A DNA stretch of 64,000 bases, taken from positions 161,944,001 to 162,008,000 of the forward strand of contig NC_088792.1 in NCBI RefSeq assembly GCF_011386835.1. The letters run 5' to 3'. The position numbers and the translations under genes were made by a program. Below, piece by piece: positions 1 to 44,527 of the stretch. The notes below the pieces were generated by a model that was not told the DNA's origin, did no database searches, and was given only the letters and a program-made list of their open reading frames with translations. The first letter of the stretch is position 1. Each line of letters begins with the position of its first letter. This DNA comes from Chrysemys picta bellii. Lineage: Eukaryota.

Positions 1-2775
1 TTCTGCAACAACATTCCTAAAGAGGAGAGGTTAAATATATTGCTGCCATTACACTCTACAAGGAACACATTCCATAAAAACGAAGGTGCCGTAAATTATA
101 CAAATATGATGCTAACAAGCCAGGAAATGCACTGCTAATGAGGTCAGCTATAGAACTCCCGCAGTGCTGCAAATCATGTGCCAATCCAGCGCAGGAGGTA
201 CAAGAGCAGCCCTCGGTCAGCATTTTCTGAGCACATTTGTAACCTGCTGTTTGGTGTATAGTTATACAGGTAGATACAAATCCTCCCCCTCTTCTTGTTT
301 ATGTGTCAAATAACCCAGGCACCAGACAAGCGCACTTTGCATTAATGTACCTTGCTATTATGTCTATTGTTCTGCAGTGCAGAGTGGTGAATTAGTCACT
401 CCAATGTGCAAATATTGGTTACAGTGTGGAAGCATGCACGCTTTTGTGCTCCTATCAGCCTTGCTTCTGAAGGAATTATGCATGCTGGCACTGGGGCTTT
501 TTTTTTTTTTGTACACGCTGTATTTGCGAAAGCTCTAAAATAAATAAATAAATATAATAATAATAATAAACATGTTCTCAGCAGCTGAGTTATTAGCTCA
601 TTCAAGCTTCCTTCCCTGTAAAGCAGAGGGACAATAAACACGCTGAAATGTGGCATTTAGGAACCAAAACAAGAAACCTATCCAATATTTGTGAGCCTGA
701 AAACACAAGCACAAAACCCTTTGGACTGTTTCATCCAACAGCATCAGAAAACGCCCCTGTCAGTCAGTCAGTATTCCTGTGGCACTCATCACTGTAGTCT
801 CTAGGTCCCGAGTATCAAGAGGTCTATTTAGGTACATAATGGGCCCTCGTGTCACAAATGCAGGAGCAATCTTCATGTCAGACTTATACTCACAACTGGG
901 GCAGGGCAAGTAATTGAGAAGGATCATTTACTAAAAGGATTTCTCTCTTTTTCTGTTTGAATTTCGGCAAAGCTTTGCCACGGCTCTGAAGAAAGCAAAG
1001 AGGCCCTGCTTCTCCTCTGCCAAAAGGCAGCAGAGTCATGCCATGATATGGAGGGGAACCCAGACAAATTCAGCACCGACTATGTCCATCTGCAGCTGGC
1101 CAGATGACTGCACACATTCTCTCATTCCAGACCTGGCCACGGCGATCCTTGCGTCTGTGACATCCAGCATTAACAGAATCCAGACATCTCTGCAGAATAA
1201 GAGGTAACAAGGTGATGTCCTTGCCCCAAAGACCTCACCTTACCAAGCAGCACCTAGCACAGTAAATATAAAGGAATATTAATAAAGTCTCTTGACATAT
1301 TTCCACATTCTCATGGCAGTACCAGCTTCATATACCCCCACAGGTGAGCATGTGCAAGTGTGCAAACATAAGTGTGACATGCATACATGCCCATTCATAT
1401 TGACACACATGCACAGTATCACCACATCCACAAAAAAGGCTAATCAGATAATGAGAGAGACACGCACTCCCAAATGCACAGTAAACACTTCCCACCTCCT
1501 CAAACATAACAGCAAATTCTAGTTAGGTGGTCACCTCAGAGCAGTGCCAGACCACAAAGCTGTGCCAGTGTTGGTTCTTCTCACGCAAATAACTATCGCA
1601 ACTAGAAATGTATTGCTATATTTAATAAGCAAGATATTTACGTTAACTAAATAGCAGCTAATTATGAAAATATACTTGGAGCTGAGCAATTATGCAATAA
1701 AATATTACACAGTTATTAAGCCTGCAATACACACACATCCCTAATAATCAAAATATTAATAGGCAGCCACTATTCTATTATACAGCAACTCTGCTATTAT
1801 ACAGCATCTGCCCTATTACTGCCAAATGGAATGCATAGTTAAGTGAATTTAGGGCACTTCATTTAATGTGTTCCCAAGAGTTCACCATGGAAGATTCTAC
1901 AAGGCAAGTCTCCATCTAGGCACCCCCTGCAGAATGCAGCCCTGGGATCCTGGAATTGCCCAATCATTCAAAGTCACATGGCTTCACTTACTGACCATGG
2001 AATATTTAACCCTTGCTTGGGCAGTGTACTGGCAGGGAAATGGCTGATGCAGTAGGGTGTGTTATAAGAGGGGAAAAGTCACTGCCAAGAATGAAGAAAC
2101 CCACATTCAGGGTGATTGGCTTTTTCTTTGCTTTAAAATAACTCTTCTATGCTCATTTAATTTCCATTAAACAGAGACTTGAAGCTAAAGACGTGTGGAA
2201 AGAAAGCTGGCTTCAAGAGTGACACATGTCTGTATTTTCCTGGATGCATGGTTCTCTTTTTATCTGCACAATCTCCAGACCCAGTGTCCACAATTCATAC
2301 TGAATGTTGTCTGCCAAGTCAAAGATTCAGTCTGTATTTTTTCCCTTTATATATTTCTGTATTACTTGACAGGGTTATTATCAGGTTTAATTTTTGTGTT
2401 TTACTCCCCATTGTGAAAACTTCCCAGAAATCTGAAAATACTTTTTCTACATATTTTGTCCTTTTTCCATTTGGCAAATGCCAATTGTTTATTTCTTTTC
2501 CTGTGTTTTAAATGAAGCTGTGCATGGCTGTTATTGGCACAAAGCAGCTTTGTTTGTGTGCAGCCTTTTCAACAGAGCTCTAGGAATACTGCTAATTACT
2601 GAACTGTGGCCCCAGAGTCATCAGAGAGCAAAAGAGCATGTCAACTGCTCTTGCAGTGCATCGCCAGCAGAGGGAGCACAGAATATTGTGTTTGTGTAGG
2701 TCTTTTTTGGAAAAACAATGGGCCTGTTTCTCAACCACTTTATCCTTTCTGTTACAGAGACAAGGTGGGTGAGGA

Positions 2776-3114
2776 ATCACGGACGAGGTGGGAAAAAAGA
2801 TCATCCTGGTCGACGTAACGATTCCGTTCGAGAACAGGACCCCGGCCTTCCGTGAAGCCCGAGCCCGCAAGCTCGAAAAATACGCCCCCCTGGCTGACAC
2901 CTTGCGGACTAAGGGCTACGAGGTGCACGTCGACGCTCTGCTCGTTGGGGCCCTGGGTGCCTGGGACCCGTGTAACGAACGCGTGCTGAAGACCTGTGGG
3001 GTGGGCCGTCATTACGCACGGCTCATGAGACGCCTAATGGTCTCGGACACTATCCGTTGGTCCCGGGACATCTACATCGAGCACATCACCGGCCACTGCC
3101 AATACCGAGAGTGA
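2776..3114 (+). CDS. C-terminal half of a restriction-like endonuclease (PD-(D/E)xK fold) of a Utopia-like retrotransposon; partial, no true start codon
   Basis: The ORF track lists 2788..3114, and the frame extends back to ATC at 2776. The upstream RPD catalytic motif is lost by 5' truncation. Confidence 0.8.
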   Translation: MTDEVGKKIILVDVTIPFENRTPAFREARARKLEKYAPLADTLRTKGYEVHVDALLVGALGAWDPCNERVLKTCGVGRHYARLMRRLMVSDTIRWSRDIYIEHITGHCQYRE

Positions 3115-3495
3115 GCCGGGGAGACCTCGTGCACCCACACACACACCCCTGCTGGACCCTATCCCTTGAGCCCTGAACCCACCAAACCTAGCTGAATCCC
3201 GCCACGTGAGGGTCACCCCATCCCCATTACCCAGCCCGCTTACTTATACCCATGACTGTCTCTACTTCCCGTATGGGTGTTAGACCCTCACCGCTTATCG
3301 ACTGTTTCCTGATCCCGCCCACCAGTTACCCACCCCTCATTGGGGACATTGCAGTCTGTATATACTATGTGTGCTGCCCAGCCCCAAAACACCAACATAC
3401 CCCTATACTCTGTATGTTACCCCCAATGACCAATAACTGACGCTTCAAATTTTCTGTATTGTTTATTTTTTAAATATTCTCTAATAAAATTTAAA
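2776..3495 (+). mobile_element. 5'-truncated Utopia/NeSL-clade (R2-like, restriction-like endonuclease) non-LTR retrotransposon: RLE C-terminus plus 3' UTR
   Basis: The ORF reads ITDEVGKKIILVDVTIPFEN...ARARKLEKYAPLA...GALGAWDPCN...SRDIYIEH. This is the DVTxPFE / KxxKY / GALGxW RLE signature of NeSL/Utopia. A ~380-nt 3' UTR follows, with AATAAA at 3483-3488 and an A-rich end at 3495. CpG-rich and stop-free. Confidence 0.88.
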
Positions 3496-4085
3496 TCTTT
3501 TATTGGACCAGCTTCTGTTAGTGAGAGAGACAAGCTTTCACAGAGCTCTTATTCAGGTCGAATAAGTTACGAATTTAAGCTCCCAGGCTCATCTTTTGAA
3601 GGTGTTTCCTTTGAGGACGCGGACTGATAGGTCATATATAGAGTGATCACTTGGTGAAAAGTGTTCACCCACCTGTGATAGGGTGTTTTTGTCTTTTATC
3701 CTTTTCCTGTGTGAGTTCATTCCAGAGCATAGCGATTGTCTGGTTTCACCCGCATAGTTGCTTTTGGGGCATTTAGTGCACTGGATGAGGTGCACCACAT
3801 GTTGTGATAGGCATGTGTAGGACCCATGGATCTTGAAAGGTGTGTTGGGGGGTGTTTATCAGTGTAGCAGTGGAGATATGTCTGCAAGTTTTGTATCTGT
3901 TGTGCTGGCAGAGTCTGGTGCCACTTTGAGAAGGTGCATCCTGATCTGTGGAGAGCTTGCTTCTGATGAGATTGGAGAGGTGGGGAGTTGGTTGAAGGCC
4001 AGAAGAGGAGGTTCAGGAAAGATTTCTTTCAGAATGGGGTCCCCATCAGGTATGGGGTATAGTGGTTTGATGATACCCTTCCGAT
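3496..4085 (-). mobile_element. Penelope-like element (PLE) 3' part: degenerate GIY-YIG endonuclease plus pLTR. The last ~19 nt of the pLTR lie at 2756-2774, on the other side of the Utopia insertion
   Basis: Minus-strand peptides IIKPLYPIPDGDPILKEIFPEPPLLAF (within ORF 3859..4233) and HLIQCTKCPKSNYAGETRQSL...HFSPSDHSIYDLSVRVLKG (3589..3798) are typical PLE linker and GIY-YIG sequence, frameshifted. The flanks AGAGACAAGGTGGGTGAGG and TCTTTTATTGGACC match the PLE terminus at 44448-44485. Confidence 0.88.
3529..3559 (-). ncRNA. Degenerate minimal type-I hammerhead ribozyme motif in the PLE pLTR (probably inactive)
   Basis: The minus strand reads GAC-CTGAATA-AGAGCTCTGT-GAAA-GC-TT-GTC. Stem I (GAC/GTC) and GAAA are present, the CUGANGA core is mutated and the 3' strand of stem II is missing. 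Confidence 0.45.
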
Positions 4086-4124
4086 TGTCATTTCCACCTG
4101 GACAAAGTAGGTATGATGTGTCAG

Positions 4125-4901
4125 CAGGGCCGGCTCCAGGCACCAGACGAGAAAGCACGTGCCTGGGGCGGCACATTGTAAGAGGCAGCATTCCGGCCAA
4201 TCTTGGGGCGGCCAGCCCAGTCTGAAGGGGCACGGACCCCGACCGGGGAAGAGGGGGGCAGAAACTAGTGATCCCCGCTGCTCATCGTGCTGCCAGGCTC
4301 CCCGGGACACGCCACTCCCTGCCGCCTGCACCGGCCTCTGCCTCCCGCACTGCTCTGAGCCTGGCCCGGCCGAGCCGCCTTTAAAGGAGCGGCTGAGCCA
4401 GCATCTCCTGCAGCCCCCGGGCACTGGAAGGAGGGAGGGTTCTGCAGCGGCCCGGCAGGCAGCGGTGGCAGGGACGGTTCCGCGGAGGCAGGGAGGATTC
4501 TGCGGCCGCCCGGCGGGCAGCGGAGGGGCGGGTCCCACTGATCCCGGTGCTGTTTGCAGTGTGCCGAGCCCCGCTGCAATGCCGGCCCCACGCAGAGGTC
4601 GGAGACCCCAGCCAGCGCTACCTGTGTCGGCCCCCTTGGAGCCTACCCGGCTGGGAGACACACCCCAAGGCCGGAGGGGGGAGCCCCTCTCGCCCAGCTG
4701 CAAGCGGGCTGCAGCGCCTGGCTACCCACGGGCGGAGGAAGCAGGCGGGTGCCGCCCTTCACCCCCTGCAAGCCGCCTTGACCGCCCTCCACACACTCCC
4801 TGCGGCTGCCGTTTTTTTGTGGGTTTTTTTTTGCTTTGGCAGTCTGGCCGCCCTTTTTTTTTTTTTTTTTTGCCTGGGGCGGCAAAAAAGCTAGAGCCGG
4901 C
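4125..4901. mobile_element. GC-rich non-autonomous hAT-type DNA transposon (CAGGGCCGGC.. terminus), right terminal inverted repeat (TIR) truncated
   Basis: Starts CAGGGCCGGCTCCAGG and ends CTAGAGCCGGC, lacking the final CCTG. An internal subterminal repeat GCCTGGGGCGGCA is present. No TSD seen. It explains the long spurious ORFs at 4029-5025. Confidence 0.7.
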
Positions 4902-41740: not shown

Positions 41741-44410
41741 GAAAACAGGTCATAATTGCAACTTAAGTAGTACATTAGCTTTGAATAGGTTTGAATTTCC
41801 TTCATGTATAGTCCCATTGAAGGAGATTTACTCAAATGAGTAACAGTTTGGAGAAGCATATTATTACTGTCTCTTTCTTATTGCTATTTGCAATTACTTT
41901 ATCCATTACATGAGGCCTCAAGGTTGAGGGAATTTTTGGCTGGTGGGTGGAGTGAGCTTTCAGAGCTGTGGATAGATGGGCCTTTCCACTGCCTCAAAGA
42001 AAAGAAACCCGCAATGATCTCTGCTGTGGACCCAACTGTAGCCTGTTCTGTGTTTGTGTTTTTTCCCAAAACAATTTAAAGCCTGTTTGCTGTGCCAATG
42101 CGCTCTCATACAGAAACCTGCCAGTCCTGGTGTAAGGAGGCAGGTCTCGGTTGAAGTTAGTGGAGGTACACTTACTGCACTTACACTGCGGATGGATTTG
42201 GCCTATAACAATGTCAAAATGCATTCACTGGCCTGAAGCCTCCACTTTATAGTGCAAGACGTCCTAATGCAGTGGTGGGCAACCTGCAGCCTGTCCTAAT
42301 GCCTCATGTTCAGCAAACCGCAGTACCTGGGGATTATCTCTGAAGAATTTAACTTGCTTCTCTGTGATGAACTCCGGCTAGGGAGATGATGGCTGTTTAT
42401 CCAAGAAGTAAATATTACTTAGCTCTCACTGTAGTCTAACAGAGAGACAGAAAGGGGGTTGCCTGGTGCCATTTTAGGGCAGGGCTTCATGAGATACAGA
42501 GTGTCCTCAGCACCCACGGGAAGAGGAAAGTGCAAAGCACCTCACAGAACCTAACACCTCCTAGCATTGGGTCTATTGTTACTTTACAATAAGTGGAGCA
42601 GGGGTGGGGAAGGATTGGGATAAAGGGTAAGGATGATAATTTCTGGAGTCCCCATCAGGCTCATATGACATGCCAACACAACAAGATAAGGACAACAGCA
42701 ATCTTTTTGTGAGGCTCCCTGTTCTGGAAGGAAAGATTTGCCTGATGGTTTTCTTTGTAGTAGGTTTGAATGGAGGGCAGCCTGGCGGGTAAGGTGATGA
42801 GATAAATGTCCATGGCATTGGTTGCTGGCTGGAACGAAAGCTCTTTTGTCTTCCACCCCAATCCTCCTGGCTGCTCTGCTTCAGCCGGGTTCTTTATTAT
42901 TAGTGCAGTACAGAACTAGACAGGAAGAGAGATCCCCAAGTTTATATCATGCTGTGAAGGAGCTGGGTGTATGGCCTGTTCGCCAGGTAAGTTACGTCTC
43001 TGGGGGCTTTTGCTAAGCTGATTTGCTGAGCTCAGCTAACTTTATAATCTAGATGAGAGATGGCAGGCCTGGTTTGGTAGGTTATTCCCCTCAAATCTCT
43101 CACACTGCTCTAGACACTGTATACAGAATATGACACATATATATTGACACTGAAATTAAACACGGGAAGGATATGTTTGTTTTCCTCTTTATCCCTTAAC
43201 CTTGCAAGCAATAACCTAGCATCTGCTATCTAGCTGGACATTTTACTCAAACATAAGTGAAATTTAACTGACAGTAGCCTTGCTGTTCTGGCTGTGTTTG
43301 GCCTTCTGCAGCTTTTACTTCAAGATCCTACTCTCTGCATTAAAAATAAGGCCAAACTGACTATACATTCCTCTTTACATTCTAGAAAATACAGGTCCAT
43401 TGCTGCTGGCATCCACCCCAGATCTGGCTGCATTACAGTGGTGCTGTAGACATAGTTAATGAAGTTGGAACAATGCTCAGTGCAGGTCATCATCAAGGTG
43501 TGAACCAAGAGCCTTCAGCAAACTTTTTGACCAGCTCTGCCCATCGTGATCTAGAGGGGCCCCATTTTGGTCAGTGCATTTCTCAGACCTGTGTAGTGTG
43601 GGAGCACTGGCTTCTTACCATCCCCAGCAGCAACAGTTCAACCTTCCCTGCCTAGAATCCTTTAGCTTCTTACAAGTGTGACTTTCCTGGGGCAGTAGCC
43701 AGGAGCTTCCAGCCACTTAAAAGATCCCATCTCTTATGTTCAAGGAATGCCCCTCTCTCCCTAGGCTTATTCTTCCTATTTTCCAGCATGAAGCTTCATC
43801 TGAAGGAGAACTATATCACCCCCTGGCTGCCTTGGAAGGAGGCTGTGTAATCAGCTTTGGGCTCCAGTACATGGAATTGCTTTCAGTCATAATAATATTT
43901 GGCACTTCTAGGACACCATTCATTAGAAGACATAAAAGTACTTTAACATTAATCAATTAGGCCTCACACCACTGGAGGGAATTAGGTACATGTTATTCCC
44001 ATTTTACAGAAACTTAAAAGCATTTAAGTGACTTTTACTCCACTCTAATAGACATGGATTTGGGCACTGTAAGACTGTGCTTTAGCATACTGAAAAGTTC
44101 ATACGACTATTACAGCAAACACGCAGTGTTTCATATGTGCTAACTACTCCTGTGCTAATCAACTAATACATTTGAAAATCATGTCTAGCTACTGATGCAT
44201 TCAAAATGATGGTTTAGTGCTGCACCCAATTAATGGCAAATATCTCCCTGACTCCTCTAAGGAATAGATCAGGCATAGTAAGCTAGGATAACAGAAAGTG
44301 GGCCTGATTCTCCATTGCCCGGCACCTTTCGCACGGGCCGGATATAGTCACCTGTGACTGGATTTGCTCACCATTAAGTATAATGTTGGTCAAAGGGCCA
44401 AGAGGATATC

Positions 44411-44527
44411 TGAGGGATAAGGTGGATGAGATAATATATTTGAAGTTGGTCCAATAAAAGATATTACCTCACCCACCTTGTCTCTCTAATATCCTGTGAC
44501 TAACAGAGCTATAACACTGCAAACAAA
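44411..44527. mobile_element. Short Penelope pLTR terminus with an inverted partial copy; the uninterrupted homologue of the Utopia insertion site
   Basis: 44448-44485 GGTCCAATAAAAGATATTACCTCACCCACCTTGTCTCT. A degenerate inverted copy GAGGGATAAGGTGGATGAGATAATATATTT lies at 44412-44441. Confidence 0.75.

What the first reader, a model, noticed from the sequence alone, without database searches (positions are those of the whole stretch)
2756..3515. U2-snRNA-targeting retrotransposon (Utopia-like) inserted at a U2-mimic motif inside a Penelope terminal repeat, with the empty site present in the same window
Seen in sequence: the RLE-encoding element (2776-3495) is flanked by AGAGACAAGGTGGGTGAGG on the left and TCTTTTATTGGACCAGCTTC on the right. 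At 44441-44485 (minus strand) the same two blocks are contiguous as AGAGACAAGGTGGGTGAGG-TAATA|TCTTTTATTGGACCAACTTC (19/19 and 19/20 identity), which fixes the insertion point. The site GTAATA|TCTTTTATT matches U2 snRNA GTAGTA|TCTGTTCTT at 12/15 positions, with the break in the same register. Established knowledge: Utopia elements insert into U2 snRNA genes, reptile families are reported to be only rarely flanked by U2, and GUAGUA is the U2 branch-point recognition sequence. From memory, the Utopia site lies just after GTAGTA, and this needs verifying. Inference: turtle Utopia may keep its sequence preference but have shifted to a much more abundant and harmless look-alike in Penelope terminal repeats, making one retroelement a recurrent landing pad for another. 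One copy cannot show that this recurs.
Basis: partly seen in the sequence, partly recalled or inferred. Interest (0 to 1): 0.78.

Follow-up and report, generated by a model that had tools for sequence, protein, structure and literature searches.

The report
Utopia retrotransposon fragment inside Penelope tail
A dead, front-truncated copy of the U2-gene-targeting jumping gene Utopia sits in the tail of another turtle retroelement at a sequence resembling its normal U2 target, which is a clean example of behaviour published for reptile Utopia in 2015 and not evidence of a new target.

Summary
The sequence observation holds. A 721-bp insert (2775-3495, + strand) splits the 3' tail of a Penelope-like element (PLE). 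Four uninterrupted copies of that tail, from three turtle species, place the break at GGTGAGG-TAATA|TCTTTTATTGG.

The insert is the last 112 codons plus the 3' UTR of a retrotransposon with a restriction-like endonuclease (RLE). It is only about 30% like R2 and 72-89% like many turtle fragments. Its 3' end resembles published Utopia-1_AMi copies.

Kojima & Jurka 2015 confirm that U2 sequence downstream of Utopia starts at nucleotide 39 (|TCTGTTCTT), so the 12/15 match is in the right register. Matches that good occur about 1.8e-5 per position in 220 kb of turtle DNA.

The retargeting idea is not supported:
- That paper already describes reptile Utopia inserting at U2-like motifs outside U2 genes, including inside transposons.
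- None of nine further independent turtle copies lies in the PLE motif. Five of the eight with a readable 3' end start with TCT, and one with an exact TCTGTTCTT.
- The PLE tail supplies roughly 1/8 to 1/4 of U2-like sites in the sample, so occasional hits are expected.

Other notes from this scan on the same genome report Utopia inside true U2 arrays (followed up) and two more Utopia/PLE adjacencies (unchecked).

The parts
2756..2774 (-). Distal 19 bp of the PLE 3' tail (the PLE sense strand is the window's minus strand), left of the insertion
   Evidence: 19/19 identical to the uninterrupted tail at 44485-44467. It aligns with four uninterrupted family copies.
2775..3495 (+). 5'-truncated Utopia-type RLE non-LTR retrotransposon fragment. 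Base 2775 is ambiguous between target, filler and element.
   Evidence: Homology to other turtle copies starts at 2776-2777. The same-subfamily copy L001 aligns to position 719 of 720. The 3' end ...AATAAAATTTAAA resembles the Utopia-1_AMi copies printed in S4 Fig of PMC4640811.
2776..3115 (+). Last 112 codons of the element's ORF plus the stop codon. This is the C-terminal part of the restriction-like endonuclease domain. The upstream RPD motif seen in relatives is cut off.
   Evidence: Translation is open to the stop. phmmer hits the R2 protein 9nl2_A at residues 1013-1105 of 1121, E 1.2e-5. There are 35 homologues, turtle fragments at 72-89% identity. Relatives carry ...LRPD(L/I).ITDE... 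just upstream of the truncation point.
3116..3495 (+). 3' UTR of the element, with no poly(A) tail
   Evidence: Aligns with the L001 3' UTR at 75%. The end point is defined by the resumption of the PLE tail at 3496.
3496..3798 (-). Proximal PLE tail and body. It holds TCTTTTATTGGACC (the reverse complement of the PLE's CCAATAAAAGA poly(A)-signal region), a degenerate hammerhead-type segment (about 3520-3560) and a GIY-YIG-like ORF at 3589-3798. The copy probably extends further right.
   Evidence: The tail aligns with the family copies. The ORF is listed. The protein atlas places it with a eukaryotic GIY-YIG nuclease cluster, score 0.93 with 191 shared features. Pfam gave no hit.
44442..44485 (-). 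Uninterrupted paralogous copy of the PLE tail motif, used as the proxy empty site. It is part of a short fold-back insertion at 44403-44495.
   Evidence: exact 30-mer match, 0 expected by chance; inverted repeat.

Best explanation
This is a dead-on-arrival, 5'-truncated copy of a turtle Utopia-family non-LTR retrotransposon. Utopia carries a restriction-like endonuclease and is normally aimed at nucleotide 38|39 of U2 snRNA genes. Here it integrated by target-primed reverse transcription into an older PLE copy.

Inferred mechanism. The endonuclease nicked the bottom strand opposite GTAATA|TCTTTTATT, a 12/15 look-alike of the U2 site GTAGTA|TCTGTTCTT. This look-alike is the reverse complement of the PLE's poly(A)-signal region. 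The freed 3' end (...AATAAAAGA-3') primed copying of the element's RNA from its 3' end. Synthesis stopped after about 720 nt. The 5' end was joined with loss of 1-5 bp and no target-site duplication.

The landing site reflects the relaxed, U2-like sequence preference already described for reptile Utopia, combined with the abundance of this PLE tail in turtle genomes. It does not reflect a dedicated change of target.

Shown: the anatomy, the break point, the RLE homology, the register of the U2 site, and the non-random U2 likeness. Inferred: the order of cleavage and priming, and that abundance alone explains the PLE hit.
For: - Break point: fixed by four uninterrupted tail copies from three species.
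- Element identity: the ORF tail is homologous to the R2 RLE domain (E 1.2e-5, roughly a third of residues identical by eye from the printed alignment). Turtle homologues are 72-89% identical.
- 3' end: the related L003 copy ends CATCTGAATAAAAAATTTAAA. A crocodile Utopia-1_AMi copy in S4 Fig of PMC4640811 ends CATCTATGAATAAAATTTAA.
- U2 register: U2 downstream of Utopia starts at nt 39, and fly junctions read ...AAA|TCTGTTCT.
- Chance: 12/15-or-better matches occur at 1.8e-5 per position.
- Other turtle copies: 5 of 8 readable 3' flanks start with TCT (binomial P 1.6e-7 at a background of 0.0198) and 4 of 8 with TCTG. L002 has an exact TCTGTTCTT outside any U2 gene. L009 has TGTAGTAT 4 nt from its 5' junction.
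- None of the nine other copies is in the PLE motif.
- The PLE consensus is 1 of 8 sites at 12/15 or better, and 2 of 8 GTA[AG]TATCT cores, in 220 kb.
Against: - The RT is missing from this copy, and no Repbase Utopia consensus was available. Family assignment therefore rests on the RLE tail, the 3' end and junction behaviour, not on RT phylogeny.
- The sample of other junctions is small. With 0 of 9, the 95% upper bound on the PLE share is 28%.
- The sample comes from other turtle species and partly from other subfamilies. Only L001 shares this copy's 3' UTR.
- TCT(G) at junctions could partly be copied from read-through templates and not come from the target.
- Two unchecked first-reader notes on the same genome claim further Utopia/PLE adjacencies. 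If both are real, the share in this genome could be higher than in my sample.
Confidence: 0.8

Rival explanations
1. True retargeting. Turtle Utopia, or this subfamily, has evolved a preference for the PLE tail motif beyond what U2 likeness and abundance predict, making PLE tails a recurrent safe landing pad.
For: The index case lands in the exact U2 register. Two further first-reader notes on the same genome describe Utopia next to a U2 mimic inside a PLE, and a Utopia 3' end abutting a PLE hammerhead. Both are unchecked. S4 Fig of PMC4640811 shows TCTTTTATT-containing empty sites for two crocodilian insertions, so T at +4 and A at +7 are tolerated.
Against: 0 of 9 other independent turtle copies are in the motif. 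The only same-subfamily copy (L001) is not in a PLE. The PLE motif already makes up about 1/8 to 1/4 of U2-like sites, so a few hits need no special preference. Utopia still occupies real U2 arrays in this genome according to a followed-up note. PLE and Utopia can also become adjacent in another way, as in the L007 chimera.
Confidence: 0.12
2. The element is not Utopia but another RLE clade (R2, NeSL, R4 or HERO), and the U2 resemblance is incidental.
For: No RT is left to place on a tree. Pfam names nothing. The nearest solved structures are R2 proteins. One spider homologue is labelled R2 by its source.
Against: By eye from the printed alignment, only about a third of residues are identical to vertebrate R2 RLE domains, whereas a turtle R2 would be much closer. 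No 28S flank is present. Relatives show TCT(G), TCTGTTCTT and TGTAGTAT at their junctions. The 3' terminus resembles published Utopia-1_AMi copies. Utopia families are catalogued for Chrysemys, Chelonia and Pelodiscus.
Confidence: 0.05
3. This is not an endonuclease-targeted insertion. It would instead be a chimera or rearrangement (template switching, recombination or DNA-break repair capture) that happens to lie at a U2-like sequence.
For: There is no TSD and the copy is strongly 5'-truncated. A real chimera of a fold-back repeat arm and a Utopia ORF fragment, flanked by a 14-bp TSD, exists in L007.
Against: The two PLE pieces are collinear and lack only 1-5 bp. Utopia is antisense to the PLE, which a template-switch chimera would not produce. 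The insert ends exactly at the element's natural 3' terminus. The site matches U2 in the exact register at P of about 2e-5.
Confidence: 0.03

Closest known systems
Reptile Utopia families with relaxed, U2-like target preference (Utopia-1_AMi in crocodilians; Utopia-1/1B/2/3_CPB, Utopia-1/2_CMy and Utopia-1_PSi in turtles; Kojima & Jurka 2015, PMC4640811)
   Same: The element has an RLE-type C-terminus and an AATAAA(A)TTTAA-type 3' end without poly(A). The 3' flank starts in the register of U2 nt 39. It is inserted outside a U2 gene at a U2-like motif inside another transposon, with no recognisable TSD. All of these are described in the paper's section on U2-like targets and in its S4 Fig.
   Different: The paper analysed crocodilian insertions in detail, not turtle ones, and does not mention Penelope tails as a host sequence. 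Here the host motif is the reverse complement of the PLE poly(A)-signal region.
R2 (28S rDNA-specific RLE retrotransposon)
   Same: The RLE domain is homologous (9nl2_A, E 1.2e-5), and integration is presumed to be by target-primed reverse transcription with a precise 3' junction and a variable 5' junction.
   Different: By eye from the printed alignment, only about a third of the RLE residues are identical. There is no 28S target, and the target register is that of U2.
Keno (APE-type U2-targeting non-LTR element)
   Same: It uses the same U2 nucleotide as its 3' junction, according to PMC4640811.
   Different: Keno carries an apurinic-like endonuclease, not an RLE, and is reported from frogs, fish, lancelet and hydra.
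Penelope-like elements with minimal hammerhead motifs in their terminal repeats (Cervera & de la Pena 2014, PMC4209133)
   Same: The host repeat has a GIY-YIG-like ORF followed by a tail of the abundant turtle family. Related copies carry a CUGA..GAAA..GUC-type segment.
   Different: The host copy here is 5'-truncated and its hammerhead segment is degenerate. It is only the passive target.

Membership tests
Utopia (U2 snRNA gene-targeting RLE non-LTR retrotransposons) | C-terminal PD-(D/E)xK restriction-like endonuclease | tested here: met
   The 112-aa tail aligns to the RLE domain of R2 proteins (9nl2_A residues 1013-1105, E 1.2e-5). It retains the VDVT...KLEKY part. The RPD motif seen in relatives is lost to truncation.
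Utopia (U2 snRNA gene-targeting RLE non-LTR retrotransposons) | 3' junction in the register of U2 nucleotide 38|39 (flank begins TCTGTTCTT) | tested here: met
   The register comes from PMC4640811. The window site matches 12/15 in that register. Among relatives, 5 of 8 flanks start TCT and L002 has an exact TCTGTTCTT.
Utopia (U2 snRNA gene-targeting RLE non-LTR retrotransposons) | At least some copies flanked by genuine U2 snRNA genes | tested here: not met
   Rfam found no U2 in the window at gathering threshold. By reading the flanks, neither this copy nor the nine relatives fetched continue into U2 sequence. The paper says this is rare for reptile families. A followed-up note reports U2-array copies elsewhere in this genome. 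I could not link them to this subfamily, because the sequence look-ups were blank.
Utopia (U2 snRNA gene-targeting RLE non-LTR retrotransposons) | RT domain grouping with Utopia in phylogeny; no Myb domain | not testable with these tools
   The copy is truncated to the last 112 codons. All fetched relatives are also fragments of 900 bp or less. No Repbase consensus is on hand.
Utopia (U2 snRNA gene-targeting RLE non-LTR retrotransposons) | Sequence similarity to a named Utopia family | tested here: inconclusive
   Only the last ~20 nt of Utopia-1_AMi copies are printed in S4 Fig. They resemble the ends of L003 and L002 and of this copy. The window protein is 77-79% identical to the L002 and L003 proteins.
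R2 | Insertion at the conserved 28S rDNA site and close similarity to vertebrate R2 proteins | tested here: not met
   The flanks are PLE sequence. By eye from the printed alignment, only about a third of residues are identical to solved vertebrate R2 proteins.
Penelope-like element (host repeat) | GIY-YIG endonuclease ORF upstream of the tail | tested here: inconclusive
   The ORF at 3589-3798(-) sits with a eukaryotic GIY-YIG cluster in the protein atlas (0.93, 191 shared features). Pfam gave no hit at E 0.1 or better.
Penelope-like element (host repeat) | Terminal repeat carrying a minimal hammerhead motif | tested here: inconclusive
   Rfam finds no hammerhead in the window copy or in L010. 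A CUGA...GAAA...GUC-type segment is visible by eye in the L002 and L010 copies. Earlier follow-ups on this genome call the family a PLE with a minimal hammerhead.

The most novel reading that the evidence does not exclude
The PLE 3' tail, through the reverse complement of its poly(A)-signal region, is a statistically enriched secondary target of turtle Utopia beyond what its U2 likeness and copy number predict. One retroelement family would then act as a standing harmless sink that lets a U2-specific element persist in large genomes.
Probability: 0.12. Interest if true: 0.45.

Novelty: already known. Interest (0 to 1): 0.2.

Why it matters
The copy is a tidy, well-resolved illustration of how a site-specific RLE retrotransposon behaves when its specificity is relaxed. 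It still nicks in the register of U2 nucleotide 38|39, but at a look-alike sequence supplied by an abundant repeat.

It extends to turtles what Kojima & Jurka showed for crocodilians, and it gives a concrete oligonucleotide pair (U2 site versus PLE site) for in vitro work on RLE specificity. It does not by itself show a new target, a new mechanism or an interaction between the two element families.

Tried and rejected
- Pfam on the RLE tail gave only a sub-threshold Zeta_toxin hit, taken as noise.
- Pfam on the GIY-YIG-like ORF gave nothing.
- Rfam gave no U2 and no hammerhead, at gathering threshold on the whole window and at E 10 or better on 2400-4400 and on the L010 PLE tail. The weak lncRNA, sRNA and miRNA hits are noise.
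- Self-BLAST of the window found no second Utopia fragment and no second copy of the PLE body.
- A scan of metagenome contigs for the chimeric junction 19-mer gave 26 hits. By reading their flanks, none carries Utopia or PLE sequence beside the match, so I take them all as chance matches.
- Look-ups of earlier findings by sequence were blank, which means nothing according to the operators.
- P0007 had no gene on record.
- L007 and L008 lack their 3' ends, so they give no 3' junction.
- The big HMMER search was not run. The word search had already found relatives, and no claim here rests on an absence of relatives.
- A template-switch chimera was considered for the window copy and rejected on orientation and collinearity.
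- No contig taken for human was met. The 471 N in the window were left alone.
Full report
**What is in the sequence**

- AGAGACAAGGTGGGTGAGG lies at 2756-2774.
- A foreign segment follows and runs to 3495, ending ...ctctaataaaatttaaa.
- TCTTTTATTGGACCAGCTTC lies at 3496-3515.
- At 44485-44442 on the minus strand the two blocks are contiguous, with TAATA between them.

A 30-mer spanning that junction occurs once in the window, against 0 expected. The 44-kb copy is not the empty allele. It is a paralogous short fold-back insertion of the same repeat tail, with 39-nt arms that are 82% complementary. It is still a fair proxy for the consensus. Three more uninterrupted copies, from Chelonia mydas and Lepidochelys olivacea loci fetched later, align with it. 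All carry (T/C)AATA between GAGG and TCTT. The break point is therefore secure to within one base.

**The insert**

Frame 1 from 2776 is open for 112 codons up to a stop at 3113-3115. Pfam names nothing. phmmer against solved structures aligns residues 9-99 to the C-terminal restriction-like endonuclease (RLE) domain of R2 proteins (9nl2_A residues 1013-1105 of 1121, E 1.2e-5). By eye from the printed alignment, about a third of residues are identical. That is homologous but far too distant for a turtle R2.

The word search found 35 relatives.
- Turtle fragments (Mauremys, Chelonia, Macrochelys, Lepidochelys) are 72-89% identical.
- Arthropod and nematode proteins are 50-62% identical. This spread fits the published distribution of Utopia.

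Relatives show ...LRPD(L/I).ITDE... just upstream of the point where this copy begins. The fragment has therefore lost the first catalytic motif and everything upstream. It is a dead, 5'-truncated copy. Alignment with four other copies shows that element homology begins at (A)TCACGG, 2776-2777. There is no target-site duplication, and 1-5 bp of the target (TAATA) are missing.

**The host**

On the minus strand, just right of the insertion, is an ORF (3589-3798) that reads like a GIY-YIG module. Pfam is blank for it. The protein atlas puts it with a eukaryotic, chordate-rich GIY-YIG nuclease cluster, score 0.93 with 191 shared features.

The host is therefore a 5'-truncated Penelope-like element (PLE) whose sense strand is the window's minus strand. 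Utopia lies antisense to it, about 45 nt from the PLE's 3' end. On the PLE sense strand the target reads CCAATAAAAGA|TATTACC. The U2 look-alike is thus the reverse complement of the PLE's poly(A)-signal region.

Rfam does not recognise a hammerhead here or in a better-preserved copy. The minimal PLE hammerheads of Cervera & de la Pena (PMC4209133) are evidently not captured by its models. Earlier follow-ups on this genome call this abundant family a PLE with a minimal hammerhead. I did not re-test that.

**The U2 register**

Kojima & Jurka 2015 (PMC4640811) state that U2 sequence downstream of Utopia starts at nucleotide 39. Their S1 Fig shows ...AAA|TCTGTTCT at fly junctions. The text gives TGTAGTATCTG and TCTGTTCTT as target fragments.

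In 219,879 bases of turtle DNA, only 8 positions over both strands reach 12/15. That is 1.8e-5 per position, so the likeness at this junction is not chance.

**Is it Utopia?**

The RT is gone and no Repbase consensus is available, so I used indirect tests.
- The last ~20 nt of the related L003 copy (CATCTGAATAAAAAATTTAAA) closely resemble a crocodile Utopia-1_AMi copy printed in S4 Fig (CATCTATGAATAAAATTTAA). This copy ends in the same AATAAAATTTAAA style.
- The junction behaviour of relatives, described in the next section, fits Utopia.
- Utopia families are catalogued for Chrysemys picta, Chelonia mydas and Pelodiscus sinensis.

I take the assignment as likely, at about 0.9, but not proven.

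**Does the PLE hit recur?**

I spent all twelve contig look-ups on turtle homologues. They gave 11 independent loci; L010-L012 are one locus in three assemblies. All are short 5'-truncated fragments. The readable 3' junctions are:

| Locus | 3' junction |
|---|---|
| L001 | ...tttaat\|TCTGTGGTG |
| L002 | ...ttttaaa\|TCTGTTCTTCC |
| L003 | ...tttaaa\|TCTGCAAG |
| L004 | ...tgtaaa\|TCTGAATG |
| L005 | ...attaaa\|TCTAAAGC |
| L006 | ...cttaaa\|CTTGAATG |
| L013 | ...attaa\|TTCATCAGC |
| L010 | ...attaa\|GATTACAC |

L009 has a degraded 3' end. It has TGTAGTAT 4 nt from its 5' junction and a possible 6-7 bp duplication.

- Five of eight flanks start TCT, against a background of 0.0198 (P 1.6e-7). 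Four start TCTG (P 1.1e-7).
- L002 carries the full U2 9-mer without being a U2 gene.
- None of the nine is in the PLE motif. The 95% upper bound on the PLE share is 28%.

On the supply side, the PLE consensus motif is 1 of the 8 sites at 12/15 or better, and 2 of 8 GTA[AG]TATCT cores in the sample. About 5 tail copies of this family occur per 220 kb, most of them mutated below 12/15. A relaxed U2-like preference would therefore send something like one in four to one in eight non-U2 insertions into PLE tails without any change of target.

**What was already known**

[quoted passage not shown] It uses TE consensus sequences such as Chompy-8_Crp as empty sites. Two of its empty sites even contain TCTTTTATT. 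A 2026 survey of R2 (PMC13188248) adds nothing on PLE targets. A search for papers joining Utopia and Penelope found none that report this pairing.

**Other notes from this scan**

On other pieces of the same genome, which one follow-up calls the painted turtle, the scan has these notes:
- a followed-up report of Utopia hitting one nucleotide of real U2 genes in a U2 array (s1-329890);
- notes of Utopia at degenerate U2 sites in an LTR element and outside any gene;
- two unchecked first-reader notes of Utopia next to PLE sequence (s1-328359, s1-333568).

These suggest that U2 targeting is retained and that PLE hits may recur at a modest rate. Both points fit the abundance model. I could not inspect those sequences.

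**Mechanism**

The most likely course is as follows.
1. The RLE nicks the bottom strand opposite TAATA|TCTT.
2. The ...AATAAAAGA-3' end primes reverse transcription of the Utopia RNA from its 3' end.
3. Synthesis aborts after about 720 nt.
4. The 5' end is joined with a small deletion.

The anatomy is shown. The enzymology is inferred from R2 and Utopia (established knowledge and PMC4640811).

A template-switch chimera is unlikely. The two PLE pieces are collinear and Utopia is antisense to the PLE. Such chimeras do exist, however. In L007, a 14-bp direct repeat brackets one arm of a different fold-back repeat fused to an internal Utopia ORF fragment.

**Verdict**

The identity of the element and the register of the site are supported. 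The retargeting and landing-pad inference is not supported, because published behaviour combined with motif abundance explains the hit. The kind of event is already known, and interest is low.

Noticed in passing
L007:10550-10968 (Mauremys mutica CM035640.1): A 14-bp direct repeat, GTTATAGCTTCTGT, brackets a composite. One ~87-bp arm of a different fold-back repeat family (the same as the palindrome at L003:6456-6634) is fused directly to a 295-bp internal Utopia ORF fragment. This looks like a chimeric retro-insertion made by template switching onto Utopia mRNA. It is a second route by which Utopia and fold-back repeat tails of this kind can become neighbours.
   Followed up: partly
L002:4755-4763 (Chelonia mydas KB523583.1): The 3' flank of a Utopia fragment is an exact TCTGTTCTT (U2 nt 39-47), followed by non-U2 sequence. 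It is a U2 mimic outside any U2 gene.
   Followed up: partly
L009:4020-4660 (Chelonia mydas KB517139.1): A Utopia fragment has TGTAGTAT 4 nt upstream of its 5' junction. GTATTG is possibly duplicated at both junctions. The nick therefore seems to lie 3-4 nt upstream of the canonical U2 register.
   Followed up: partly
window:44403-44495: The 'empty site' copy is a roughly 90-bp fold-back insertion of the PLE tail, with 39-nt arms that are 82% complementary and a 15-nt spacer. It is not a full element.
   Followed up: partly
window:3496-3512 (minus strand CCAATAAAAGA): The U2-like target motif is the reverse complement of the PLE's AATAAA poly(A)-signal region. Any PLE family that keeps this signal in the same context will offer the look-alike.
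   Followed up: no
window:4029-5025: A GC-rich stretch just beyond the PLE fragment has long overlapping ORFs on both strands (up to 288 aa), consistent with a CpG-island-like region. It was not examined.
   Followed up: no
L010:14519-14600 (Lepidochelys olivacea OZ222855.1): A PLE tail in sense orientation ends about 35 bp upstream of the 5' end of a Utopia fragment. They are adjacent, but not at the U2-like motif and in the opposite relative orientation. This shows how often the two repeats are neighbours by chance.
   Followed up: partly
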